This document shows positions 24,993 to 42,613 of a DNA stretch of 64,000 nt, piece after piece. The translations under genes were made by a program, and so were the position numbers. The stretch spans positions 124,001-188,000 of the forward strand of contig NW_015174329.1 of assembly GCF_001447785.1 (NCBI RefSeq), read 5' to 3'. The notes under the pieces were generated by a model that was given only the letters and a program-made list of their open reading frames with translations, had not been told where the DNA came from and ran no database searches. Every line of letters begins with the position of its first letter. The stretch's first letter is position 1. The DNA comes from Gekko japonicus (lineage: Eukaryota).

Positions 24993-26325
24993 TGACAGGT
25001 TCATCTATTCTTTTAAGTAAGTCAGCAGAGTATTAAGAGACTGAGTCCATGGTGTGTTTTAAAATATAAGAGTTTACTATAAACCTAACATGGGGAAAAG
25101 GTACACAGGATATGAAAATAACAGAGCTATTATGCCTACATCCTTGCAGCTAAAAGGTAAAACGGGAAGAGCCGAATGGCGTCTCCTTCTCTAGTCAGAA
25201 CAAAGAACGGGAAGAGAAGCCATAAAATGGCTTGACACTCTAGTCCCAATCAAATCCCTAGATCAGGGAGAAAATTCCCGGGCTTGCTACATCTAAAGAA
25301 CATTGGTTACACGAGAAACATGTGACTTAACAAACATCATTAACCCTGTAAATACTGAGGTGTTTTTAACTTGTAATACCCAACACCCCTTCTCAAGTTA
25401 TAACACGAAAGTCATGCAAATTCAAACATTCAGGAAGAGTCTCAAAACGTTGCTTGTCAAGCGGCTTGGTCAAGATGTCGCCAATCATCTGATCAGTAGG
25501 ACAGTATTGGAGTTCAATCAGTCCTTGATCTTGCAGGTCTTTCACATAGTTATGTTTGAGAGCGATGATCTTACTCTTGGATATGGTGCTCTCACCTTTG
25601 CAGATAGTGATGCAAGCTTGATTATCTTCAAACAGTATTATTGGCTTTGGTTCATCTATTCCAAAGTCTTTCAGTAGGTGAATAATCCAGTAAAGTTCAT
25701 AGCTGGCACTTTGCGCTGATTCAGCTTCCACGGTAGAAATAGCTACGACAGATTGCTTTTATAGTGATGCAAGCTTGATTATCTTCAAACAGTATTATTG
25801 GCTTTGGTTCATCTATTCCAAAGTCTTTCAGTAGGTGAATAATCCAGTAAAGTTCATAGCTGGCACTTTGCGCTGATTCAGCTTCCACGGTAGAAATAGC
25901 TACGACAGATTGCTTTTGACTAGTCCATTCAATCAAACTTGTATCCACTTGTAGATTTGCCATCAGGTGTGTCTTTGCCCCAGTTGGCATCCATTAATCC
26001 AGTCAGTCTTGGGTCATCACAGGCTAAGATTTTAAGTTTGTAGTCCAAAGTTCCTATTAGATATCTTGCCAGTCTCTTTATAGCTTTCCAGTCATGGATG
26101 GTTGGTGAGCTGGTCTTTCTGCATAACAGTCCAACAGCTGAAGTTATATCTGGTCTGCAGATTGTGCTCAAGTATAATAATTTTCCAATTGTGGATCTGT
26201 ATTCATGGTTGTCTTTAAGTAGTGGTCCATCTGTATTCTTGAGGTAATCCTTTTCAAGAGGAGTGCTCACTTGTTTGGAATGTTTCATTCCCACAGATTC
26301 AATAAAGTCCATGATCTTTTGCTTT
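24993..26325 (-). mobile_element. Truncated Copia LTR retrotransposon (element A): 3' LTR 24993-25385, PPT, RT/RNase H remnant
   Basis: TG..CA LTR; PPT TGAGAAGGGG; RT-RNaseH peptides closely similar to the C-terminus of the 27951 ORF; 157-bp internal tandem duplication. Confidence 0.92.
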
Positions 26326-26358
26326 TGTAACGATTTCATGTTTAACTCTGTGTGTGTG

Positions 26359-26798
26359 TGTTGGAAGTTACAAGTTAGAACACTTCTATTCAGTATTTAC
26401 TGAGTTAATGCTGTGTTCTGAATCACATGTTTGTTTGTATCCTATCTGCTTAGAGAGTTAGAAAGCCCGCCAGATACAGATCTAGTTTGTTGTTCTGATT
26501 GGGGAATGGAGTGTTACTATTTAGCATTTTATGGCTCTTTGTCCCTGAGCAAGAAGAAGCTCCACTCTCCATTAGACTTTAGCCATGTAAGGAAGTCTCC
26601 ATTACTCTTCGTTAAGTTTTCTAGATGAGAGGATGTAGAAATAAAGCTCTTTGTTATTTTACCTCCTGTTTACCCTACCCTTGATAGGTTGTTAGTAAAC
26701 TTTTATATTTTGAAACTACCATGGACTCAGACTCATTTTTACTCTGCTAACTCTGCTGAATTAAGAAATTAAGAAATTAAATACTAAACCATCTAACA
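26359..26798 (+). mobile_element. Copia 5' LTR (element C)
   Basis: TGTTGG...CTAACA; near-identical to 31321-31757; preceded by GTGTG TSD. Confidence 0.92.
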
Positions 26799-27097
26799 GG
26801 CATCTAACAAGCGGTCTGCCTGATTAGCCGGACTTCGGCGGATTTGCTTCCAAGGAACCCGATAAGAATCCGGGGCGTCGATGTGGGATTCTCCGCGGCT
26901 AGGAGGCAGGGCCTTCTCGACGGTGTCCCCGAGTCCCTGCCTTCTCGTTTTGCTTCACCTCTTCTGCGTTCTAGACACCAAATCAGAACCTTCCAGGAGC
27001 CTGAGGGAACCGTTTGAACAGCCTTGACCCGCGAAGAAACCCGGGGTATAAATCAATAATAAATTAATTACTTGATCAATAATAAAGAAATAATGTT

Positions 27098-27305
27098 GTG
27101 GGGTAGTGGTTAAGAGGGTCGGGACTAGTATCTGCAAGAGCCCGGTTCGAGTCCCCACTGGTGCCCTGGAACCTCGCTGGGCGGACTTGGACCAGTCAGC
27201 CTAGTCTACCTCACGGGGTTGTGGTTGGGAGGCCAAAACGGAGTAGAGGAGAACCAGACAAGCCGCTTTGGGGAGAAAGTTGGGGTATACATGAATTAAT
27301 CAAAT
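27098..27305 (+). mobile_element. tRNA-derived SINE (Squam3-like)
   Basis: gtagtggttaagag A box and ggttcgagtccc B box; body similar to 38494-38725. Confidence 0.7.
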
Positions 27306-27374
27306 AAACTTGAAACCGTTCTATTCATTTTTTTTTCCTCCCTGAGGTTTCTCTGACCTTGTGCTGTTGCTTAG

Positions 27375-27840
27375 NNNNNNNNNNNNNNNNNNNNNNNNNN
27401 NNNNNNNNNNNNNNNNNNNNNNNNNNNNNNNNNNNNNNNNNNNNNNNNNNNNNNNNNNNNNNNNNNNNNNNNNNNNNNNNNNNNNNNNNNNNNNNNNNNN
27501 NNNNNNNNNNNNNNNNNNNNNNNNNNNNNNNNNNNNNNNNNNNNNNNNNNNNNNNNNNNNNNNNNNNNNNNNNNNNNNNNNNNNNNNNNNNNNNNNNNNN
27601 NNNNNNNNNNNNNNNNNNNNNNNNNNNNNNNNNNNNNNNNNNNNNNNNNNNNNNNNNNNNNNNNNNNNNNNNNNNNNNNNNNNNNNNNNNNNNNNNNNNN
27701 NNNNNNNNNNNNNNNNNNNNNNNNNNNNNNNNNNNNNNNNNNNNNNNNNNNNNNNNNNNNNNNNNNNNNNNNNNNNNNNNNNNNNNNNNNNNNNNNNNNN
27801 NNNNNNNNNNNNNNNNNNNNNNNNNNNNNNNNNNNNNNNN
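27375..27840. other. Assembly gap
   Basis: Run of N. Confidence 1.
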
Positions 27841-27842
27841 AC

Positions 27843-30800
27843 AAAGGAAATGTAAAGAAGGCCGTTAAATGCTTTGTCTGTTCCCGAACGGGCCATCTTT
27901 CCAAAGACTGCTGGTTTAGACAATCACAGACAGATCAAAGAAATAAAGACATGCGCTCTCCCCCTATTTCTTCTGTAAGAGGAAACGCCAGAGGGCGTGG
28001 CAATGGGAAGCCAAACGGTCATCAGGGGCAGGAAAAATCCAAGCCTGTGTTTCTCCTGAGAGAGGCTGTGCCAGAAACTGCAGGAAAGCGAGCCGAATGT
28101 GCGAATGTGCTTGCTGTAAACATTAATCATAGCAGAGAATACAGTGATGAATCACTGTGGCTACTGGACACAGGGAGTGCCGTCCACATTTGCAACAGTG
28201 CTGAATATTTTGTTGATCTGAATAAAGATGAGATGCCCAAACTGATCAAAGTTGATAATGAACCATTGAGAGTTGCTGGAACAGGAAAGATTTTTCTTAA
28301 TGTGTTAAATTCTGCTGGCCAAATTCAGCAAATGACTTTAAATGATTGTGTATTTGTGCCTGAAGCTAGTACTTGTCTGATCTCCTCAAGGAGAATTATT
28401 GCTGCTGGTTTTAACATTAATCTTAAAAAGGGACAAGGAAAAATTTGGCACAAAGATGGAGTCGAGCTCATTATGGAAGAGCACGACAGTTACCATTATG
28501 TAAGAAATCTTGGCATAACTGAAAATGATGAACTGGACACAAGTGGACCTGTGTTTCACACAAAATCATCTGAATGTGAGCACAAAGACTGTTTATTTAA
28601 ATGGCATGTGATGTTTGCTCACAGAAATTTACAAAGTGTGAGAAAGCTTCTGAAGGGCTGTAATATTGATGCTGTTGAATGCAATACTATTAGTAATGGT
28701 TGTGATACCTGTTTTAAGGCAAAAGGCAAAGCGCCTTGTTACAGAGGCAAAAATCCAGAACAAGATAAAGGTTTTCTAGAGACTGTGTACTCAGATCTTG
28801 TTGGCCCTATCAAACAATCTACTGGTGGTAGTAAATACTTTGTGACTTTTATGGAAGCAAAATCCAGATATGTCTATACCTACCTACTTAAAAGTAAAGA
28901 CCAAGTACTTGACAAATTTAAGTGCTATGTTGCTGCTGTTAAAAATAAATTTGGCAAAGCGCCTGAAGTGTTATTCACTGACAATGGCACAGAGTATTGC
29001 AGCAGTGAGTTCCAAAGGTTCATGGAACAAGAAGGAATTGAACATCAAACAACTATTGTTTATTCTCCAGAACAAAATGGAACAGCGGAACGCTTAAACA
29101 GAACCATACTAGAAATGGCGCGTTCTATGCTAATACAATCTGGAATTTCAGAAGATATGTGGGGTGAAGCAGTCAATACAGCTACTTACCTGCACAATAG
29201 AGTTCCATCTAAAACTACAAATAAAATTCCTTTTCAATTATGGCATAACAGGATGCCTGGACTTAAACACATTAAAGCATTTGGATCTAAAGCCTATGCC
29301 CACATTCCAAAAGAGAAAAGGGGCAAATTAGAGCCAAGAGCAGAAATTGGTATCCTAGTGGGGTACGCTCAAGGAGGAAAAGGCTACCGAATTTTTGATT
29401 CTACAAACTGTGTAATTAGAGAATGCAATGTGGTACATGTTGATGAGAGTAACATCCTGCAAACTCCTAAGCCAGCTGAGTCCACAGCACAACCTGTCAA
29501 TCAGGAATCTACAGATGTCTCTTTCTTTGATGTGATCACTTGGCAATCTGCAGAGACCACCTGTGACCAGGCAGGTCCATCTCCACAAGAGGATTCCACC
29601 TCAGAAGGGGAACAAGGGAATTCCACCTCAGAAGGGGAACCAGGAGAGGCAACGCCAAGGGTAAGAGAGACAACTGCTGTGAGACAATCAGCAAGGAGTA
29701 CCAAAGGTGTTCCACCACCAATGTACGGAATTTGTGCAAGTGTGCAACAAATAAAGGAACCTACTAACTGGAAGGAAGTTAATCAACTACCTGCATCTGA
29801 AAGAAGCAAGTGGATTAATGCCATGGAAGAAGAATTTGCATCTTTGCAAGACAAACAAGTTTGGACTCTTACTGAGTTACCTTCAGAAAGAAAAGCCATC
29901 GGCTGTAAGTGGGTGTACAAAGTGAAGTATAACCCTGACGGCGAAGTGGACAAGTACAAAGCTCGTCTTGTCGCAAAAGGATTTTCTCAAAAATATGGAA
30001 TCGATTTCTCGGAAACTTTTGCACCTGTTGTAAGCTACACAACCTTCAGAACACTTTTGAGCATAGCAGCCTCAAGGGGCATGCACATTGAACATTTGGA
30101 CGTCAAAACTGCGTTTCTCAATGGAGAATTGAATGAAGAAATCTACATGGAACAACCAGAAGGATTTTCAACAAAAGGACAAGAAGGCCTAGTGTGCAAA
30201 CTCAACAAAAGCGTTTATGGACTAAAGCAAGCAGCAAAAGCGTGGAATGAGAAACTGACTGAACTGTTACAAAAACAGAACTTTCAACAAGGAATAGCAG
30301 AACCGTGTTTGTTCTCAAGAATCAAAAATGGACAATATCAGTACATACTCATTTATGTTGATGACTTGATTATTTGTTGTGAAAATCAAGGAGATGTACA
30401 GGAAATAGCAGATGAACTAAACAAGGAAGTGGAAGTGAAACAATTGGGACCTATAAAACACTATCTTGGAATACAAATTGAAAGAACTGATGATGGAAGT
30501 TTTCTTCTAAGCCAAAAGCAAAAGATCATGGACTTTATTGAATCTGTAGGAATGAAACATTCCAAGCCAGTGAGCACACCTCTTGAAAAGGATTACCTCA
30601 AGAATACAGAGGGACCACTACTTCCAAATAACCACGAATACAGATCAGCAATAGGAAAATTATTGTATCTTAGCAAAATTTGTCGACCAGACATAACTTC
30701 AGCTGTTGGACTATTATGCAGAAAGACCAGCTCACCGACTATCCATGACTGGAAAGCTGTAAAAAGACTGGCAAGATACCTAAAAGGAACTTTGGATTAC

Positions 30801-31313
30801 AAACTGAAAATCTCATCCTGTGATGAACCAAGACTGACTGGTTTCATGGATGCCAACTGGGGAAAAGACACAACTGATGGAAAATCTACAAGTGGATACT
30901 TATTCTACTATGGAAACAGTTTAATTGACTGGACTAGTCAAAAGCAATCTGTTGTAGCGATCTCTACTGCAGAAGCTGAATGTGTATCAGCGCAAAGTGC
31001 CAGCTATGAACTGTACTGGATCATTCATCTACTGAAAGACTTTGGAATAGATGAACCGAAACCAATAATAATGTATGAGGACAATCAAGCTTGCATCGTT
31101 CTCTGCAAAGGTGAGAGCACCAAATCCAAGAGTAAGACCATTGCTCTTCAATGCAAATATGTGAAAGACTTACAAGACAAAGGACTCATTGAACTTCGTT
31201 ACTGTCCTACTGACCAGATGACTGCCGACATCCTGACCAAGCCGCTTGACAAGCAACGTTTTGAGAATCTTCGTGAAAGTTTAAATTTGCATGATTTCAG
31301 TGTTATAACTTGA
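27843..31313 (+). CDS. Copia gag-pol polyprotein (5' end lost in gap): zinc knuckle, protease, integrase, RT, RNase H
   Basis: CFVCSRTGHLSKDC in frame upstream of the 1120-aa ORF; WLLDTGSA; TDNGTEY..EQNGTAER; YVDDL; ADILTKPL; Copia order PR-IN-RT-RH; no stops. Confidence 0.96.
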   Translation, partial: KGNVKKAVKCFVCSRTGHLSKDCWFRQSQTDQRNKDMRSPPISSVRGNARGRGNGKPNGHQGQEKSKPVFLLREAVPETAGKRAECANVLAVNINHSREYSDESLWLLDTGSAVHICNSAEYFVDLNKDEMPKLIKVDNEPLRVAGTGKIFLNVLNSAGQIQQMTLNDCVFVPEASTCLISSRRIIAAGFNINLKKGQGKIWHKDGVELIMEEHDSYHYVRNLGITENDELDTSGPVFHTKSSECEHKDCLFKWHVMFAHRNLQSVRKLLKGCNIDAVECNTISNGCDTCFKAKGKAPCYRGKNPEQDKGFLETVYSDLVGPIKQSTGGSKYFVTFMEAKSRYVYTYLLKSKDQVLDKFKCYVAAVKNKFGKAPEVLFTDNGTEYCSSEFQRFMEQEGIEHQTTIVYSPEQNGTAERLNRTILEMARSMLIQSGISEDMWGEAVNTATYLHNRVPSKTTNKIPFQLWHNRMPGLKHIKAFGSKAYAHIPKEKRGKLEPRAEIGILVGYAQGGKGYRIFDSTNCVIRECNVVHVDESNILQTPKPAESTAQPVNQESTDVSFFDVITWQSAETTCDQAGPSPQEDSTSEGEQGNSTSEGEPGEATPRVRETTAVRQSARSTKGVPPPMYGICASVQQIKEPTNWKEVNQLPASERSKWINAMEEEFASLQDKQVWTLTELPSERKAIGCKWVYKVKYNPDGEVDKYKARLVAKGFSQKYGIDFSETFAPVVSYTTFRTLLSIAASRGMHIEHLDVKTAFLNGELNEEIYMEQPEGFSTKGQEGLVCKLNKSVYGLKQAAKAWNEKLTELLQKQNFQQGIAEPCLFSRIKNGQYQYILIYVDDLIICCENQGDVQEIADELNKEVEVKQLGPIKHYLGIQIERTDDGSFLLSQKQKIMDFIESVGMKHSKPVSTPLEKDYLKNTEGPLLPNNHEYRSAIGKLLYLSKICRPDITSAVGLLCRKTSSPTIHDWKAVKRLARYLKGTLDYKLKISSCDEPRLTGFMDANWGKDTTDGKSTSGYLFYYGNSLIDWTSQKQSVVAISTAEAECVSAQSASYELYWIIHLLKDFGIDEPKPIIMYEDNQACIVLCKGESTKSKSKTIALQCKYVKDLQDKGLIELRYCPTDQMTADILTKPLDKQRFENLRESLNLHDFSVIT

Positions 31314-31320
31314 GAAGGGG

Positions 31321-31757
31321 TGTTGGAAGTTACAAGTTAGAACACTTCTATTCAGTATTTACTGAGTTAATGCTGTGTTCTGAATCACATGTTTGTTTGT
31401 ATCCTATCTGCTTAGAGAGTTAGAAAGCCCGCCAGATACAGATCTAGTTTGTTGTTCTGATTGGGGAATGGAGTGTTACTATTTAGCATTTTATGGCTCT
31501 TTGTCCCTGAGCAAGAAGAAGCAAGAAGAAGCTCCACTCTCCATTAGACTTTAGCCATGTAAGGAAGTCTCCATTACTCTTCGTTAAGTTTTCTAGATGA
31601 GAGGATGTAGAAATAAAGCTCTTTGTTATTTTACCTCCTGTTTACCCTACCCTTGATAGGTTGTTAGTAAAATTTTTATATTTTGAAACTACCATGGACT
31701 CAGACTCATTTTTACTCTGCTAAAAATTAAGAAATTAAATACTAAACTATCTAACAG
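31321..31757 (+). mobile_element. Copia 3' LTR (element C)
   Basis: Follows PPT TGAGAAGGGG; TG..CA; followed by GTGTG TSD and the resumed element B LTR. Confidence 0.95.
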
Positions 31758-32039
31758 TGTGTCTTTAAAAGTTTGGATGCATGGCTGTATGATAGTCTAG
31801 AGTAGTGGAAACAAGCAAGTGGTGCTTGGCGGTGGGATACGAACATCCTGAGGAAGAAAACACATTATAGAGAACATATATTGAGTGAAATAAAAAGTCT
31901 GGGAGAAGGAAAATTCAGCAATGGCAGTCTGAGGAGACAGACAGCTGAAGTGATATAGTGCTGTTGAGAGCTCTAGGACATCAACACAGTTCTGTAAAAT
32001 ACAGTAGAATTATAGAAAGAAATACAAAAAGACAGAAAA

Positions 32040-33650
32040 ATGGCAGAGTTTCTAGTATTAAAGAAAGAGGCTCTGATCCAAAAGTGTAAAGATTTAAATT
32101 TACCTCATGAAGGAAGAGGTACAGAACAGATGAAGGCTAGTCTGATTCAGAATGCGGTAGATGCTAGCAAACGTGAGAGGGAGAAAATATATAACCCCAG
32201 TCCAGAATATTTAAAGTATCTGAGAGAAAAACATAAAAAGGATCAAGAAAAGAGGAAAGCTGAAGCTGAACTTAAACTTAAAGAATTAGAGTTTAGGTCT
32301 AAAGAGATGGGTCGCATTTTTAAAGCAGAAAGATTACAAATAGAAAGAAGAAGACTTGAACTTGAAGAAAAAAGGAAAGAGAGAAACCCTGATTTCAAAC
32401 ATGAGTTTCCTCAGGTTGAACCAGCAGTCCCAGAAAACAAGCCTCTAGGTATATTGGCAACAAACAAATTTGATACATTTTCAGGGACACAGAGAGAAGA
32501 GGACTCACAGAGTCCTGTCAGGGTTAAAGAGAATTCCCAACTTACTGAAACAGAGAAAAACTTTAGAAGCCAGAGGTCTCAGAAAGAGATGTCAATTGAG
32601 CCTTTTGATGTCTGGATGAAAGACTATTTTGCTAAAGAAATTGCAGCAGAAAAAGCTAGCTATGAAGAATTCTTAAAATATCAATGGGAGAAGAAGGTAA
32701 AGGCCAGAGAGAAAACTGCTGAACTACTCCAGCATCCAGTTGTTGCTGTTATTTCCAGTAGCCCTATCCTAGAACTGAATACAGAAACTAAACCTGAGGT
32801 TATAGTAGAAGTTGAAAAGGAAAAGGAGGAGTCTGAAATTTCTTTGCAAGTACCTGCCAATAAGCAAGCCTCATCAGATCTCAGTATTGCTAGCTCAGAA
32901 GATAATAAACTGTCACAGAATACCTGTCTTCTAGAATCTGGTAGTGAAGAATTAGAAAATGTGTATGTTGAAGAGACTAGTACTGATACCCCTGTAGATA
33001 TAAAAGTGACAGTTGAAGTCAGTGGAGTTGGAACTGAGAATTCCAAGGTAAACCTATCTGATCCTGCTAAAGAGAATCCTGAGAAGCTGCAAAGTGAATC
33101 CATTTTACTGGGAGAAGATGTGGAAGCAAAGGGAAGTAGAGCTCAAATTACAGTGTTAAAGGAAGACATTGCATTGCAGAAGGAGCAAAAAGAAATTGAT
33201 GATGGAGTAACTGAAACAAATGTTAACACTAAAGAAAGAACAACATTATCTGAAGTTTTAATTCCTTGCCAGACTACTGAACCTCTTGTAGGAAAAAGGA
33301 AGGCAGTTTTGCAGAATTGGGAAGTGTTACCAGGAGCAACATACCTGGAACTATGGCAGCTGACAGAGGTCAACCAGCTTGGGAAGCAAGGAGAAGACAC
33401 TTTACATGAACTTTGTATTTTCTTAAGAAATGTTACTTAGAGACTTGCCATGGACAAACGTTTCAGAGTCTTTGCAAAACCAATTGATGTGCACAAAGTA
33501 CCAGACTATGTGACAGTTATCAAGCAGCCAATGGATCTTTCAGCAATTGTTTCTAAAATTGATCTGATTTGTAGCAGTGCTTTGGAGTATAATCCAGACA
33601 GAGACTCTGAACATTGTCTCATCAGAACTAGAAACACACAGATAGTGTAA
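32040..33650 (+). CDS. Gag-like coiled-coil protein fused in frame to a captured ATAD2 bromodomain fragment (one in-frame TAG at 33438-33440)
   Basis: 466-aa ORF continues in frame after TAG as RLAMDKRFRVFAKPIDVHKVPDYVTVIKQPMDLS..ALEYNPDRD. Confidence 0.85.
33231..33630 (+). pseudogene. ATAD2: Processed ATAD2 fragment (pre-bromodomain linker plus bromodomain)
   Basis: KRKAVLQNWEVLP...EDTLHELCIFLRNVT*RLAMDKRFRVF..PDYVTVIKQPMDLS..SKIDL aligns colinearly with recalled vertebrate ATAD2; no introns. Confidence 0.9.
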
Positions 33651-35280
33651 ATAGTAAAAACAAACAAAAACATAGCGGAGATGACCTCAGCCCAGCTGAT
33701 TTTGGACATCCCCAAGATGACCTCAGCCCAACTGTGGTACATCCCAGAAATGACATCAGCCTAAACAAGGGCATCACTTAGAGGAGAACAACACCCCAGC
33801 AGAGTTGGACTGTGAGTTAAGGAACCCACAAAAACATTTATGGCAACCAAGAAGAAGGAACTGAACTGAACTTGCAGTTAAAGACTATCAGAACTTTAAG
33901 AAGCCAGAAGAAGCTACACCCATCCCTTCGGACAAAGAGATGTGTTCCGCTTAAAGGACAAGGGGGGGATATGTAACAATTTCATGTTTAACTCTGTGTG
34001 TGTGTCTTTAAAAGTTTGGATGCATGACTGTATGATAGTCTAGAGTAGTGGAAACAAGCAAGTGGTTTGATTGGTGAGTGACAGAGAGGGGGAGGGGTTT
34101 TGGAAATGATTCTGTGTGGATGAGCAGATATGTCAGTCAAGAGTGTCAGTTAGAGATATGACAGTTGATGAAGACAGTTGATGTTCAGTTAAGCAGTTTT
34201 AGTTCTGATTTCTGTGAGAGAAGTTAAGTTCTGTGACAGGGAGAAGAGTGAAGCATCCCTGTGTGGGATGAGTTTAGTTCTGGGGTCTGAAGGAGAGACC
34301 TTCTTGTGTGTGATATGAGAGTTAAGTGCTGTGTCTGAAAGAAAGTGACAAGCAGTTCTGTGTTGAAACAGTTATAAGCTGAAGCTGAGTGTCTAGTAAA
34401 CAGTAAAGATTATATGGACTTAAAGAAAAAAGTGTTACAAAGTTACATACCCAGATCCCTGATAGTGGGAGAGAAAAGTGTGTGAAATATCAATAAATCT
34501 ACTTTTATTTAAGATACCAGTTCTGAAAGAAATTCTTCCCAGGAAACACATAGACCCTCATGAAAGCCTAAACCCTCGATATACCTACCCAGTGATGAAT
34601 ATTATATTATAAAGGTTTGGAAAGCCTTAAATTTCCTGGTGGCAGCCGGATACACATAATAAAATAAAACCTAAAGAACACTTTAAAGGGAAACCAGACC
34701 TCCCCAGTTAAGGGGTCGTCACAATCACCATCCTTGTTATCAGTCCTGTTGTGGATCAAGATACGATTTTACTTTTCTCTTGATCATCCTGGGTTCATCC
34801 ATCTTCTTTGTTATTTATTCCATGCTATTAATTTCCAGGCTCCCTTTTTCATTATTTGTTCTCACAACCGACCTTAGCGACAGTTGAGCGGGTGGGGTGG
34901 GTCTTTTACAGAAGAGGATCGGGCTGATGGTGGTGGGGGTTAAAATAAATCAAGGAGCAACTGGTTTGCACTGAATGGCGCTGAGGACACAACTGGTAAG
35001 GGACTGCCCTGTGCATACAGATCCTGCGAATGCAGACAGATTGCTGGAGTCTTTCCCCCCTTGGCAGACCTGTTGCTGCTGATATCTCACCATTTCAGAC
35101 GACTCCTAGGAAACGTATAACTTGCCTTTCAACACAAAGATTTTAAAGGAAGGCTGCAACAAAATACAAAGCAAACAAACTGGTATACTGCAGCTGGTCA
35201 GACTTAAAATTGTGAATAACTGAAACCTTATAAATTACCTGCCTACCATTTTCTTCTCACCTTGACACAGAGAGTACTCC

Positions 35281-35412
35281 ATCTTTCTGTGTCATACCTC
35301 TGAGGATGCCAGTCACAGTTACTGGCAAAACGCCAGGTCCTACAATGCCAAGACCATGGCCATACAACCCGGAAAATCTACAGCAACGAATGAACTCCGG
35401 CAGTGAAAGCCA
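35281..35412 (+). mobile_element. Penelope-like retroelement terminal fragment
   Basis: cctctgaggatgccag..gcaaaacg..caacccggaaaa motif typical of squamate Penelope ends. Confidence 0.5.
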
Positions 35413-36828
35413 TCTCCAGCTTTCTGCCTCAGGAGCCTTATAGCTAAACTAGGTTTCTTTATTCGACTCGTTCATGGGAGAAAGGCAGAGAAGGCTTTTT
35501 TTAAAGGGGAAGCTCGGAAGTTTGCAATTAGTTTCAATAAAAGTTATTTATGACGTTTGGCATCTATGACACTCGTTTTAGAATTTTTTGCTGTGGACCA
35601 ATGCAGCTACCGACCTGGGTTTTTTGTTTTTGTTTAGTTTTTTGGATACAATACTAAGAACGCTTGAATAAAATGCGACTGACGTCCAAGTAGGGTTGCT
35701 TACTTCGACTCCTGATTTGCACACATCCGGGCAGCATCTGACTCAACAAGGATCACTACAGTGAACGCCTCTTCTGCCGTGGCCGCCAGACTACAGGGCG
35801 ACGAAGCGTTTCTGTGCTAGATGGAGGTACTTCCAGGAGATCTGCCCTCCTACTACTAAGTAGCGGGGACTTGGCCACTGACCTCCGCTGTATTGGCTTG
35901 AGCCCTCTCATACCAATGCAAGTCCTCGTCGTTCCCTGTTAACTACACGGGGGGGGCTGACGGACCCCGCTTCCTTATTCGCGCTCATTCCCACATTCCC
36001 ATTCATGTTGACGCTCCTCCCCAGCCTCGATCTGCTTTGTTCTAGGTGAAGGCGCGCGGCCCACAGCACTGGACGCCCAGAAGAACCCGGGAAGGTACCG
36101 GTATTACTTTTTAAATTTACTACCCTCGACCCCGAAGCAGTCCGTGCGGCACAGAACTCCCCGGCAGCGTCGCTCTGAAGTGTAGCGCTCAATGATGCAC
36201 TCATGAGTTCTCTTCCTGTGTACTGAAGGCAACGTGCTTTTCTTTCCAGTATACCATGAGACTCGGGATGCCAATTGTACCCTCACAGATTTACTATAGA
36301 AGTTGAAATGAATGGGGCTGTTTCCAAATCTAATTAAAGAGGCTTCGGTGGGTGGTATGTGGTCCATGGGGTCGCGAAGAGTCGGACTCGAGTAACTCCC
36401 GAACAATTGCCGAAGCCACTCCAGCGATCCTTCCGAAACTGGACGGCTAGAGCTGAAGACGCTCCAGAGCCATTTCTCAAACGATTTTAGCAACCCCCTG
36501 GTTTCGAGCGCAAAGCAGAGAAGACCAAACAAGATGGTCTGGCCGGACGCAATGGGTAGATCAGGCCCAAGCCCTTGCTTTAGGCGACGCAGAGTTTAGG
36601 ACTTCCCTACTAAGGAATCATACATCCGTTCGTCGATGGCTTAACGTTTCCAAGCATATCCATTTCTCCCCCGCCCCGCCCGCCATCAAGATCTGAGGAA
36701 GGGGAGGGAGGCGTGCCAGGGACCGGGAATCCTTGATCTTTCCCGGAGACGACAAGAGACTCTCACGACGCATGGGTGAAACTGGAACCAACAGTCACGA
36801 CTGCTCACCAGGCCCACGCAGCCAAGTT

Positions 36829-39199: not shown

Positions 39200-40275
39200 T
39201 GAAGGTCCTAGACATGCACCGCCTGCAACACAGCCCGTCCCACCATCATACTCTGATGAAAACGAACGTCTAGGCTAGGGTGTAGTGCTTCACAAACATG
39301 TGAGGAGTAGCCTAGGTCGCCGCATTGCAGATGTCACCAAGTGACGCACCTTGCAGGAAGGCCATGGATGTCACAATTTGTTGGGTGATAGTGAGATATT
39401 GAAAAATTGGTATTTACCAGAGATCAGTTAGTCCAGGAGTGCCAGAGTAAAATAATTCAGACTGAGAGTCCATGTGTGATTAAAATATAAAGTTCTTACT
39501 AAATTCTAGCACGGGAAGGGTAACTGGGATGAAAATAACAACAGAGCATAATCGGCTACATCCTTACTCTACAAAGACAAAACTAGAAGAGAGAGATTAT
39601 GGCTACTCTTCTTCAGAACACCAAACAAAGATGGGAAGAGAAGCCATAAAATGGTAATACACCTTGACACTTTAGTCCCAATCAAATTTCTAGATCAGGG
39701 AGAAAATTCCAGGGCTTTCTACAGCTAAAGAACATTGGAAACATGTGACTTCCTGTAAGTAACATAAACAAACATTTAACCCCAGATATACTGAGTGTTT
39801 TCAACTTGTAAGACCTAACACAATTGCCTGGGTGGAATGTGCTCGTATCGGACCCGGGAGCGGCTTCTTAGCGAGCAGATAGCCAAGTTTGATCGTCTCC
39901 ATGATCCATTTGCAGAGACACTGATAGAATAACTTCTTCCCTTGTGAAGGTAATGCATGAGAGACGAACAGAGCTGGGGTCTTTCTGAAAGGCCGCGTTC
40001 CGTCCAGGTAGAAGAGCAAAGCCCTCTTGACATCTAGGGAGTGAAGACAACGTCCTTCTCTCCATGGCGTTGGAAAGAACACAGGGAGAACAATGTCCGC
40101 TTGGAGATGGAACTCCGAAACTACCTTGGGCAGAAAGGAGACATCTGGGGCCAAGGTAACACCATCATTATGAAACGTCAGGTACAGAGAGTCACACCTG
40201 AGCGCTAACAATTCACTCACACTCCTGGCTGAGGTAATTGCTACCAGGAAGGCAGTCTGCCAGGAGAGGGATCTA
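39200..40275 (-). pseudogene. DIRS tyrosine recombinase remnant, interrupted by a solo LTR
   Basis: SELLAL..FLPKVVSEFH..LHSLDVKRALLFYL..RAHSTQA; continues past the LTR as SMAF..DICNAAT*..FVKHY. Confidence 0.9.
39379..39820 (-). mobile_element. Copia solo LTR
   Basis: TG..CA; 5-bp TSD CAATT; homologous to LTR 24993-25385. Confidence 0.93.
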
Positions 40276-41489
40276 AAGAGTGTGATCAGACAGGAACATC
40301 TGGGAAGCGTCCTGCAGTCGTCGGCAACCCATGCTGCTCCACTATGGAAGCGGAGTTAAAAGATACCAGGGAAAGTCCAGTAGTAAATGGGTTCCGCCGA
40401 CAGGCCATGGACAGACTTTCCCCGTCTGATCATGCAAGCGCGCTCTCGTGCTGTCAGGGTGGTCTGATCAGGCCATTCCGGCTTGGTTCCATTCTCCCCT
40501 CCCTCCCTCAAAGTATGTGCATCATCGCATACTCCATAGGGGACCCTCAATGCTGAGGTGCGATTCCTCACTTATGTGCAAGGGAAACGGCCAAAACCCC
40601 ACAAACGACTTACCTGCAGTTGCATCTGATCACACAGTGACAGGCTGTGCCTGCAGCTACAAAGGGATGTGTGATCACGCAACTGTGTGTCAATTTCCTC
40701 CAGAGGAGACAGCCTCGCTTCCCCTCCGCTCCAACTGGCTCGTGTAACCGCAGCCAAACTGGAGGCCTGTGAAGAAGTGTGTTTGCGTGGGGAGGACAAT
40801 TTGGAAATCCCACCCCACAAATCTCTTCCTTCAGGATTCTATAAACTCACAGGAACACCAGCAAGCTAACGTCTGCTCTCTCATTTGCCTCACAACTGAT
40901 TCAACCGCACTATACGATCCATGCCTCTTGGAACATACCAGACTGCTTTTGCCACCTCCCCCTTTCCTCTGGTTACTTTTTTTTTTTTGCACGCTGGGGA
41001 AGTTCTGCCCCTGTAGAGCACCCTAGCTTGTTTAAAGGTGGCCTTGTTTTGTTGCTTTAGACACTATAAAAGGGGCTAGCCACTGTACTAGCGGTGTCTG
41101 AATGAAGAATGCCAAATCACACAAAGCTTACTTTTAGGTTTTGATTTAAGACTTACTTTATATTTGACCATGTACAAGGCATCTGTTAATCTGCTCATAC
41201 CAGGATGTTCTTTTCCAATCTAAAAATTTAAAATGACAAAAGAGATGTATTAAGAAAGTAGATTCTTGTAACCATGACAGTCACAGCAGATAGCTGGTCA
41301 GCTTGTGCACCCAGATGAACAGTAAAAGTACACAGCTACAGTTTACTTGAATATTTTGATGACATTGCTGGCTTGTGTAGTAGAGGTGCCAAGAGCCAGT
41401 GCTAGGATCCAAAAGGATGCTGGTTCAAATCTCATCTCAGCCAGTTTTGGTGCCAATTCACTAGGTGGTCTTAGACAGGCCATCCAGTA

Positions 41490-41655
41490 GAGTCTTCAAG
41501 GCAAGAGACGAACAGAGGTGGTTTGCCATTGCCTGCTTCTGCAGAGCAATCCCAGGCTTCTTTGGGGGTCTCCCATCCAAATCCTTACCAGGGCTGACTC
41601 TGCTTAGCTTCCAAGATATGATGAGATCAGACTAGCCTGTGCTGTCCAAGTCAGG
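41490..41655 (-). mobile_element. 5S rRNA-derived SINE
   Basis: Reverse complement of gatctc..ttggaagctaagcag..ttggatgggagacc. Confidence 0.7.
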
Positions 41656-41854
41656 ACAGTCCCCTCTGTAGTATATCACCAGCCTACCTTACAAGGATTG
41701 CTGTGATGATGTACCAAGTGCTATTTATATGCTTAGTCTTGTTAGGCATCTTATTTCCCCACAAGTCCCACTTCCTAAACCTGTCCTTGGGATCTTAAAC
41801 AGTGGAAAATGTAACACCTCTCTAAGCAGAAGTGACTACTCCTGCGACTCTTAC

Positions 41855-41950
41855 CTCTAAGAAAACACCGACCACTGCTAAGCCATCTGGAGCCTCCACC
41901 GCCTCTCCAAAAGTTCTATATTTCCTGGCGTTCCAGTGAACTAAGTGGAG
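41855..41950 (-). pseudogene. CA7: Orphan carbonic anhydrase exon (CA7-like, 96 nt) with intact splice sites
   Basis: [32 protein letters not shown]; tcttcaccag acceptor, gtaaga donor; no other CA exon recognised in the window. Confidence 0.85.
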
Positions 41951-42584
41951 CTGGTGAAGAGAGTTATACATCATTACTGTAAATGTTAGCTGACAAGGGC
42001 AAAGCTGATTACGTTCAGTAAGCAATAAAGGCGGCCAACGCTTGGCTTTGCTGAGAACCGTAAAGCTGCCAGACATTCTGGGAAGCTGATGAAGCTCAGG
42101 AAGCCTGCAAACAGCTGTTGCTTTGTTGAATCAATCAGCAAGGATGGTAAACACAAAAGAAAACTCCCGTTTCAGACCCAGGTTCATCAACCCATCATGC
42201 CAGAACTCACCAGGGTTTTAGAACCAAAGCCTTGGATCCATTCTGCAATACAGCAGAATAGCATACAGTACGACGCCACTTCCTATCAAATGGTTTCATT
42301 ATAGCATTCTTTACCTGATGTGCAATTTTTATTGTAAAAGAGCAAAAAAGTACATCTGTCTGTGCTGTTTTTTCGGCCAATGACAGCTGTATATTCTTAG
42401 CTAGCACAGAGGGCCAATCAGTGCTCTCCTACACCAGTTGAGTAACACCTTAGCTTATCCTCCTGGGAGTAGCTCCTCTAACTGTCTTCCACCACTGTCA
42501 TAAAGGAGCAATAACAACAATGCTCAGCTTTGCAGCAGGCTCTCACCTAATGTGCCTTTCACTCAGCTAAAATATCCAACATAA

Positions 42585-42613
42585 GGTTATGGGCCCAGCA
42601 CGCTTCTGCTGCG
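42585..42613 (-). other. Copy of initiator tRNA-Met 5' half (nt 11-39) following an LTR-like end (..TATCCAACA)
   Basis: GGTTATGGGCCCAGCACGCTTCTGCTGCG is 28/29 complementary to vertebrate tRNA-iMet. Confidence 0.85.

What the first reader, a model, noticed from the sequence alone, without database searches (positions are those of the whole stretch)
32040..33650. Pol-less Gypsy-like LTR element whose Gag-like ORF is fused to a captured ATAD2 bromodomain
Seen: a single long frame lies between a PBS-like site and the PPT/3' LTR. It runs from a helical/coiled-coil N-terminus through an acidic linker, then from 33231 reads KERTTLSEVLI..KRKAVLQNWEVLP..EDTLHELCIFLRNVT*RLAMDKRFRVFAKPIDVHKVPDYVTVIKQPMDLSAIVSKIDLICSSALEYNPDRD. 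Known: this tracks the recalled ATAD2 linker and bromodomain, an acetyl-histone H4 reader. The RVF shelf, the PDY tyrosine and the acetyl-lysine-binding Asn of ALEYN are retained. No introns interrupt ~400 bp, which points to mRNA capture by RT template switching. In this copy there is one in-frame TAG, ~15 aa between the two IDL motifs are deleted (microhomology pattern), and the last helix is absent. Inference: a retroelement family carrying a host chromatin-reader module on Gag, conceptually like chromovirus chromodomains. It could act as a targeting or decoy module, or be neutral cargo.
Basis: partly seen in the sequence, partly recalled or inferred. Interest (0 to 1): 0.88.

Follow-up and report, generated by a model that had tools for sequence, protein, structure and literature searches.

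The report
Gecko LTR element carrying SLK–ATAD2 fragments
This is a dead copy of a pol-less LTR retrotransposon family of geckos whose single reading frame is stitched from pieces of two host genes, the kinase SLK and the chromatin reader ATAD2; the bromodomain piece is incomplete in every copy seen, so it is most likely passive cargo.

Summary
A 466-codon frame (32040-33440) runs on after one TAG to 33650. Its end is an ATAD2 linker plus a partial bromodomain (PDB ATAD2, E=4e-24), with a 15-residue gap and no last helix.

Residues 206-405, read as Gag and an acidic linker, are a fragment of the host kinase SLK (E=6e-31 against a lizard SLK; PDB SLK, E=5e-9). The first 205 residues have no detectable relative and no capsid or zinc-knuckle feature. 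So this is a two-gene mosaic, not Gag plus a bromodomain.

The element is a real LTR element. Its 753-nt 3' LTR (33972-34723) follows a polypurine tract. Its 5' LTR is cut down to 95 nt at an 8-nt microhomology and is split by a young Copia (26359-31756). Reads from other copies show the normal LTR-end/PBS junction.

The family has roughly ten to a few tens of copies in this genome. In Gekko kuhli, 53 gene models on 19 scaffolds contain it, and 14 of them carry the ATAD2 part; the 10 that reach the gap have the same gap. The TAG is private to this copy.

This fits the known process of LTR-mediated chimeric retroposition. Interest is modest. This scan had not noted it on other DNA.

The parts
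26326..26358 (+). 5' LTR, first 33 nt (starts TGTAAC)
   Evidence: Matches 33972-34004 of the 3' LTR.
26359..31756 (+). Young Copia element nested in the 5' LTR. It interrupts the element and is not part of the family.
   Evidence: LTRs at 26359-26798 and 31321-31756; 5-bp target duplication GTGTG at 26354-26358 and 31757-31761; 1120-aa pol ORF with RVT_2 and rve domains.
31762..31823 (+). 5' LTR continued (LTR positions 34-95). It ends in the 8-nt CAAGTGGT microhomology, where about 660 nt of LTR are missing.
   Evidence: The two 5' pieces joined (95 nt) match 33972-34066 with 2 mismatches. In other copies the LTR end at 34721 joins 31816 directly: 4 DNA reads, 3 RNA reads and 2 contigs, with 3 nt ambiguous.
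31820..31844 (+). PBS-like site (starts TGGTG)
   Evidence: It directly follows the LTR end in the canonical junction recovered from reads. Its resemblance to the complement of a tRNA-Leu 3' end is from memory only and was not tested.
31845..32039 (+). Untranslated leader
   Evidence: Stops in all three frames. Some copies have a 149-nt length variant here.
32040..32654 (+). ORF residues 1-205, origin unknown: helices, a long coiled coil and a disordered stretch
   Evidence: No Pfam hit. No relative, and the Atlas gave no usable hit. The AF2 model shows helices 2-18, 26-51 and 55-115, with disorder at 116-169. Residues 121-205 recur at 27-40% identity in six G. kuhli models.
32655..33230 (+). 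Captured SLK fragment: end of the kinase domain plus the acidic region, equivalent to SLK residues about 263-465
   Evidence: BLASTP against the Phrynocephalus SLK-type kinase P0045: 46% identity over 213 aa, E=6e-31; P0045 has Pkinase at 35-292. PDB SLK 4usf/2j51 at E=5e-9, against STK10 at 3e-3.
33231..33626 (+). Captured ATAD2 fragment: linker after AAA2, then helix Z, the ZA loop, part of helix A, the second half of helix B and the start of the BC loop
   Evidence: The 3' breakpoint at 33626 comes from RNA loose ends that continue as ATAD2 helix C.
33438..33440 (+). In-frame TAG, private to this copy
   Evidence: All 18 DNA reads of run X18 and all 9 contigs of run X1 differ at the third letter and give a sense codon.
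33558..33565 (+). Site of the 45-nt deletion (one remaining copy of the 8-nt repeat ATTGATCT)
   Evidence: RNA run X19 has loose ends on both sides (56 and 40 reads, agreement 0.98-0.99) that carry the missing coding sequence. The same gap is present in all 10 G. kuhli models that reach it.
33627..33650 (+). Non-ATAD2 tail of the frame, with the TAA stop
33670..33767 (+). Three tandem 33-36-nt repeats in the 3' untranslated part
33953..33969 (+). Polypurine tract
   Evidence: Purine run 2 nt upstream of the LTR start.
33972..34723 (+). 3' LTR, full length (about 752 nt, TGT...ACA)
   Evidence: DNA read depth is 150-470 from 33928 to 34847 and 0 from 34848. The joint from 34721 back to 31816 marks its end.

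Best explanation
This is a dead copy of a non-autonomous LTR retrotransposon family of geckos. In the family's founder, the internal coding region was replaced by pieces of host mRNAs.

Proposed mechanism (inferred, not shown): reverse transcriptase switched templates inside the particle, from the element's RNA to co-packaged SLK mRNA, then to ATAD2 mRNA, and back to the element. This produced one open frame made of three segments: an orphan N-terminal segment, SLK residues about 263-465, and the ATAD2 linker with a partial bromodomain.

The chimera kept its LTRs, PBS and polypurine tract. It was therefore copied in trans by an autonomous relative that shares the abundant 753-nt LTR, and it spread to tens of sites. 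Further switches between family RNAs produced structural variants.

The ATAD2 piece lost 45 nt between two 8-nt repeats early in the family's history and never included helix C. It therefore cannot form the four-helix bundle and is passive cargo.

This particular copy is inactive for three reasons. Its 5' LTR is reduced to 95 nt. A young Copia sits inside that stump. It carries a private stop plus other private non-synonymous changes.
For: Shown:
- ATAD2 identity.
- SLK identity.
- LTR, PBS and PPT anatomy, and the canonical junction in other copies.
- No pol.
- Family copy number. DNA depth is 5-20 over the internal region and 150-470 over the LTR, against about 0.4 on the unique flank.
- Presence in G. 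kuhli: 53 gene models on 19 scaffolds of different length contain the SLK part, and 14 of them also carry the ATAD2 part.
- The same 15-residue gap in all 10 G. kuhli ATAD2-bearing models that reach it.
- Three structural variants. G. kuhli type A has SLK 284-462 followed by an unrelated tail. Type B has a shorter SLK part plus ATAD2 that starts about 8 residues earlier and ends at NPD. The window copy has the long SLK part plus ATAD2 that runs on to LIR.
- Parent mRNAs of the same species lie on the fragments and diverge exactly at the deletion and at 33626.
- No sign of protein-level constraint. Among the 25 best-supported variant sites, codon positions are 7/8/10, and 7 of 25 are synonymous against 24% expected. 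This copy's 8 private differences in 33292-33606 are all non-synonymous.
- G. kuhli copies have replaced RVF, PDY and YN.

Inferred: template switching as the capture route. The model and close precedents, including multi-gene chimeras and secondary retroposition, are in PMC5131818.
Against: - Spliced (mRNA) origin is not proven. No ATAD2 or SLK gene structure could be fetched, so the absence of introns rests on general knowledge that these coding stretches span several exons in vertebrates.
- Nucleotide-level microsimilarity at the junctions could not be checked without the parent sequences.
- There is no target-site duplication, and the left and right flanks do not fit one insertion.
- The autonomous partner was not found.
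- The frame is open across three unrelated segments, and all five length variants seen inside it are multiples of three. This hints at some pressure to keep it translatable.
- The shared 45-nt deletion could in principle have recurred, because it lies between direct repeats.
Confidence: 0.8

Rival explanations
1. The chimeric ORF is kept open by selection in the lineage that still transposes. Possible reasons: the element's RNA must be translated to escape decay or to be packaged; or the fusion protein (N-terminal coiled coil, acidic SLK region, half bromodomain) acts as a Gag surrogate, a decoy or a chromatin-tethering factor.
For: The frame has 536 codons and is broken only by a stop that no other read shares, while the other two forward frames have 34 and 65 stops. 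It stays in frame across two junctions. All five length variants inside the ORF are multiples of three. The family is transcribed at a low level in RNA run X17. With 5% divergence, about 3.8 new stops would be expected in this sequence.
Against: The variant sites show no third-position or synonymous excess. The bromodomain remnant lacks helix C and half of helix B in all copies. G. kuhli copies have lost the pocket residues. The few changes since insertion suggested by the LTR stump (2 of 95) are enough to explain a nearly open frame. Some of the in-frame variants may be reads of the parent genes.
Confidence: 0.1
2. It is an ordinary LINE-made processed pseudogene of ATAD2 that happened to land inside an unrelated LTR element or SLK pseudogene.
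For: Intronless host coding sequence inside repeat-rich DNA.
Against: There is no poly(A) tail. The fragment is truncated at both ends within the coding sequence. It is joined in frame to SLK. The same SLK-ATAD2 combination with the same deletion is found at many dispersed sites in two species.
Confidence: 0.04
3. ATAD2 was captured independently in the two gecko lineages, with the 45-nt deletion recurring between the 8-nt repeats.
For: The window copy is closer to ATAD2 than the G. kuhli copies are: 32 against 26 of 41 residues identical to human (counted by eye). The 5' and 3' ATAD2 breakpoints differ between the window type and G. kuhli type B. A deletion flanked by direct repeats can recur.
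Against: It would require the same gene, the same SLK-bearing family and the same deletion to arise twice. The differing breakpoints are explained more simply by later recombination between family members.
Confidence: 0.06

Closest known systems
LTR-mediated chimeric retrocopies (Tan et al. 2016, Genome Res, PMC5131818)
   Same: Host mRNA fragments replace part of the internal region between two LTRs. Parent genes are only partly copied. Chimeras of two or more parent genes occur. The chimeras act as non-autonomous elements that are retroposed again.
   Different: That study covered Drosophila, mosquito, zebrafish, chicken and mammals, mostly as single or few copies. Here the chimera has amplified to tens of copies, is present in at least two gecko species, and has diversified into structural variants. 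Junction microsimilarity was not verified here.
Maize Bs1 retrotransposon (cited in PMC5131818)
   Same: A pol-deficient LTR element whose ORF combines fragments of several host genes.
   Different: It is a plant element. Bs1 is reported to be expressed as a hybrid protein, whereas no evidence for a protein exists here.
Acutely transforming retroviruses with gag-onc fusions (established knowledge)
   Same: Spliced host coding sequence taken up by template switching, fused in frame behind an N-terminal element-derived segment, with pol lost and mobilisation by a helper.
   Different: The captured pieces here are truncated, non-catalytic and non-folding parts: the tail of a kinase domain and half a bromodomain. 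No phenotype or selection is evident.
Chromoviruses (Ty3/Gypsy elements with a chromodomain on integrase)
   Different: The chromodomain is intact, conserved, sits at the integrase C-terminus of autonomous elements and directs integration. Here the module is an incomplete bromodomain in a pol-less element with no integrase.
LARD/TRIM non-autonomous LTR elements
   Same: LTRs, PBS and PPT without pol, mobilised in trans.
   Different: Those usually carry non-coding internal regions, not an open frame built from host genes.

Membership tests
LTR retrotransposon (order LTR) | Two direct long terminal repeats with TG...CA ends | tested here: met
   The 3' LTR is 33972-34723 (TGT...ACA). The 5' LTR keeps 95 nt with 2 mismatches. 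Reads from other copies show the full LTR end joined to the PBS.
LTR retrotransposon (order LTR) | PBS after the 5' LTR and a polypurine tract before the 3' LTR | tested here: met
   A TGG-initiated site lies 2 nt after the canonical LTR end (31820-31844), and the purine run 33953-33969 lies 2 nt before the LTR. Which tRNA it pairs with was not tested.
LTR retrotransposon (order LTR) | Target-site duplication flanking the element | tested here: not met
   The flanks at 26321-26325 and 34724-34728 differ. The old Copia pol interrupted at 26325 does not resume after 34724.
Ty3/Gypsy superfamily | Pol domain order and RT/integrase phylogeny | not testable with these tools
   There is no pol in the element, and the autonomous partner is absent from the window.
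Retroelement Gag | Capsid-like domain and/or CCHC zinc knuckle | tested here: not met
   No Pfam family at E<=0.1 on the 466-aa ORF. No CCHC motif in the translation. The AF2 model of residues 1-205 shows only helices and disorder. No relatives were found.
Bromodomain (PF00439) | Sequence match above the Pfam gathering score | tested here: met
   30.5 bits against a 21.7-bit cut-off, but only profile positions 14-46 of 84 are matched.
Bromodomain (PF00439) | Complete four-helix bundle (Z, A, B, C) | tested here: not met
   Against ATAD2 chain 3dai only residues 22-62 and 72-99 of 130 are matched, so 15 residues spanning the A-B turn are missing and helix C is absent. Parent RNA reads show what is missing.
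ATAD2-derived sequence | Best match to ATAD2 rather than ATAD2B or another bromodomain protein | tested here: met
   ATAD2 at E=4e-24, ATAD2B at 7e-20, next-best proteins at 2e-7. The linker matches full-length ATAD2 chain 8h3h.
SLK-derived sequence | Best match to SLK across the end of the kinase domain and the following region | tested here: met
   E=6e-31 against P0045. PDB SLK at 5e-9 against STK10 at 3e-3.
LTR-mediated retrocopy (Tan et al. 2016) | Host fragment is intronless and colinear with the spliced mRNA | tested here: inconclusive
   mRNA reads of the species are colinear with the ATAD2 and SLK parts, but the parent gene structures could not be obtained.
LTR-mediated retrocopy (Tan et al. 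2016) | Microsimilarity at the switch points | tested here: inconclusive
   At protein level the SLK and ATAD2 alignments overlap by about 10 residues around 33216-33254, and type B ends ATAD2 at a PD shared with the type A tail. No nucleotide test was possible.
LTR-mediated retrocopy (Tan et al. 2016) | Secondary retroposition as a non-autonomous element | tested here: met
   Multi-copy DNA depth in this genome, and G. kuhli models on 19 scaffolds.

The most novel reading that the evidence does not exclude
The three-part frame is kept open by selection in the transposing lineage of this gecko family. The reason could be that a translatable RNA is needed for stability or packaging, or that the orphan N-terminus, acidic SLK region and half bromodomain form a working Gag surrogate or chromatin-directed factor. 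Combined with the other unchecked first-stage notes of in-frame host captures in this genome (PCM1, KHDRBS1), this would point to a gecko LTR lineage that habitually builds and maintains host-gene fusion ORFs.
Probability: 0.1. Interest if true: 0.65.

Novelty: new member of a known kind. Interest (0 to 1): 0.35.

Why it matters
It is a clean vertebrate example of an LTR element that joined pieces of two host genes (a kinase and a chromatin reader) into one frame and then multiplied as a non-autonomous element in at least two gecko species.

It adds squamates to the range of LTR-mediated exon shuffling. It also shows how such chimeras continue to recombine with each other.

There is a practical consequence for annotation. 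In the G. kuhli annotation, 53 models, several fused to neighbouring real genes (for example WDR33, a CD36-family gene and CDK11B), include pieces of this element.

It does not provide evidence for a new chromatin-targeting strategy, because the reader domain is incomplete in every copy seen.

Tried and rejected
- Origin of the first 205 residues. I ran Pfam, a word-indexed search restricted to residues 1-215, full HMMER against 1.84 billion representatives, a separate search with the 205-aa piece, two Atlas searches and an AF2 model. None gave a relative or a Gag-like fold.
- G. kuhli loci. No nucleotide comparison between species and no dN/dS was possible.
- Short-LTR hypothesis. I first considered an 89-95-nt LTR (TRIM-like). 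I rejected it because read depth stays high up to 34724 and because of the 34721-to-31816 joint.
- Old Copia continuation. I tested whether the old minus-strand Copia resumes after the 3' LTR; a short look-alike at 34725 suggested it might. It does not resume.
- Other negative searches. There is no other copy of the element or its LTR in the window, no tRNA gene in the window and no Rfam match in 31300-36300.
- Literature. A search for bromodomain capture by LTR elements and for a G. kuhli genome paper found nothing.
- Scan notes. Searches of this scan's notes by sequence and by the words ATAD2, bromodomain and SLK found nothing.
- Caveat on read depth. Dips in depth over the conserved bromodomain part were not interpreted, because human-like reads are filtered out silently.

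Full report
**What is there**

Between 31757 and 34723 lies an LTR-bounded unit with one long frame. The ORF 32040-33440 (466 aa) ends in TAG (33438-33440), and the same frame runs on to a TAA ending at 33650.

The piece after the TAG matches Pfam Bromodomain above the curated cut-off, but only over profile positions 14-46 of 84. It matches human ATAD2 bromodomain chains at E=4e-24 in two stretches (chain residues 22-62 and 72-99 of 130). ATAD2B and all other bromodomains score lower. The 70 residues before the TAG align to the ATAD2 linker in the full-length chain 8h3h. That hit is weak alone (E=0.012), but it is contiguous with the bromodomain hit.

**The 'Gag-like' part is mostly another host gene**

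A full HMMER search of the 466-aa ORF returned two kinds of hit: gecko gene models, and two STE20-like kinases. BLASTP against one of these, a Phrynocephalus protein with Pkinase at 35-292, gives 46% identity over 213 residues, E=6e-31. ORF residues 206-405 align to kinase residues 263-474. PDB SLK chains match at E=5e-9, against 3e-3 for STK10.

So the 'acidic linker' is the tail of the SLK kinase domain plus SLK's acidic region.

The first 205 residues have no Pfam hit and no relative in three protein searches. They have no zinc knuckle. They fold in silico as two short helices, one long helix and a disordered stretch. 'Gag-like' is therefore not supported.

**LTR anatomy**

- The 3' LTR starts at 33972, two bases after a polypurine tract (33953-33969).
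- The 5' LTR begins at 26326. After 33 nt it is split by a young Copia element (26359-31756), which has a 5-bp target duplication and a 1120-aa pol ORF.
- The 5' LTR resumes at 31762. Joined, the 5' pieces match the 3' LTR for only 95 nt, with 2 mismatches.
- Read laying settled the true LTR length. In a DNA run of the same species, depth is 150-470 from 33928 to about 34724-34847, and zero beyond.
- Four DNA reads, three RNA reads and two contigs join 34721 directly to 31816. This is the normal LTR-end/PBS junction in other copies.
- The LTR is therefore about 752 nt. This copy's 5' LTR lost about 660 nt between two copies of an 8-nt motif. The loss happened either by deletion after insertion or by a premature plus-strand transfer (inference).
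- No target-site duplication is present, and the flanks do not fit a single insertion.

**Family**

All significant protein relatives other than the two kinases are Gekko kuhli gene models. There are 53, lying on 19 scaffolds of different length, and several are fused by the annotator to neighbouring real genes. Fourteen of them also carry the ATAD2 part. All ten that reach the gap show the same 15-residue gap.

Three structural variants exist:
- G. kuhli type A: SLK 284-462 followed by an unrelated tail.
- G. kuhli type B: a shorter SLK part, with ATAD2 starting about 8 residues earlier and ending at NPD.
- The window type: the long SLK part, with ATAD2 running on to LIR.

Neither ATAD2-bearing type can be derived from the other by simple deletion. 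This suggests repeated recombination among family RNAs (inference).

In this genome the internal region has DNA depth 5-20, against about 0.4 on the unique flank. That corresponds to roughly ten to a few tens of copies at 85% likeness or more. The LTR is ten to forty times more abundant than the internal region.

**Parent genes and the breaks**

One RNA run (X19) gives reads that lie on the ATAD2 part. They carry, as loose ends at 33558/33565, the 45 nt that the element lacks; these translate to 12 residues, 9 of them identical to human ATAD2. They continue past 33626 into helix-C-like sequence. I read these as the species' own ATAD2 mRNA.

This fixes the 3' breakpoint of the capture at 33626. 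It also shows that the deletion lies between two 8-nt direct repeats. Reads of the same run on 32824-33007 differ from the element at sites where the DNA copies agree with the window, so I read them as SLK mRNA.

The TAG is private to this copy. All 18 DNA reads and all 9 contigs covering it have a sense codon there.

**Selection**

- Among the 25 best-supported variant sites in the frame, codon positions are 7/8/10, and 7 are synonymous against 24% expected by chance.
- This copy's eight private differences in 33292-33606 are all non-synonymous.
- G. kuhli copies have replaced the RVF, PDY and YN states.
- About 4.7% of random substitutions in this frame would create a stop. One stop is what 1-2% divergence predicts, in line with 2 mismatches in the 95-nt LTR stump.

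Against a purely neutral picture, the frame is open across three unrelated segments, and all five length variants seen inside it are multiples of three. I keep this as an unexplained hint.

**Comparison and verdict**

The structure fits LTR-mediated retroposition by template switching. That process is known to give partial copies, multi-gene chimeras and secondary retroposition (PMC5131818). Maize Bs1 and gag-onc retroviruses are further analogues.

This is a new member of that kind, in squamates, with unusual amplification. The chromovirus analogy fails, because the reader module is incomplete and there is no integrase.

**Limits**

- Spliced origin and nucleotide microsimilarity at the junctions remain untested.
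- The tRNA-Leu reading of the PBS is from memory only.

Noticed in passing
window 26359-31756: Young Copia element. Its LTRs are near-identical apart from one ~10-nt indel, it has a 5-bp target duplication (GTGTG), and it has an intact 1120-aa pol ORF (27951-31313; RVT_2, rve). An assembly gap (27375-27840) lies in its gag region. The family is abundant: DNA depth is about 250-340.
   Followed up: partly
window 25020-26325 (minus strand) and 39459-39821: Older Copia fragment covering pol residues 855-1120 at 84-89% identity, with an exact 157-nt tandem duplication at 25604-25917. A 75%-alike LTR-like stretch lies 14 kb downstream. The rest of its pol is missing.
   Followed up: partly
window 35229-35411: Very high-copy short repeat, SINE-like. 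DNA depth is about 5800, against about 0.4 on unique flanks, and read ends are sharp on both sides.
   Followed up: no
window 34062-34123: RNA run X17 piles about 1100-fold on this 60-nt piece of the LTR alone, with hundreds of loose ends on both sides. An abundant transcript of unknown origin shares only this piece.
   Followed up: no
window 33670-33767: Three tandem 33-36-nt repeats in the element's 3' untranslated part.
   Followed up: no
Gekko kuhli protein models P0001-P0055: Many annotated G. kuhli proteins are chimeras of this element's ORF with neighbouring real genes (WDR33, a CD36-family gene, CDK11B, a P4-ATPase). These look like annotation artefacts of an unmasked repeat.
   Followed up: partly
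window 40990-42613 and other pieces of this genome: First-stage notes report further host-gene captures by retroelements in this genome: a CA7-type exon in a DIRS element, and PCM1 and KHDRBS1 in LTR elements. They are unchecked. If the same LTR family is involved, the pattern would be worth a joint look.
   Followed up: no
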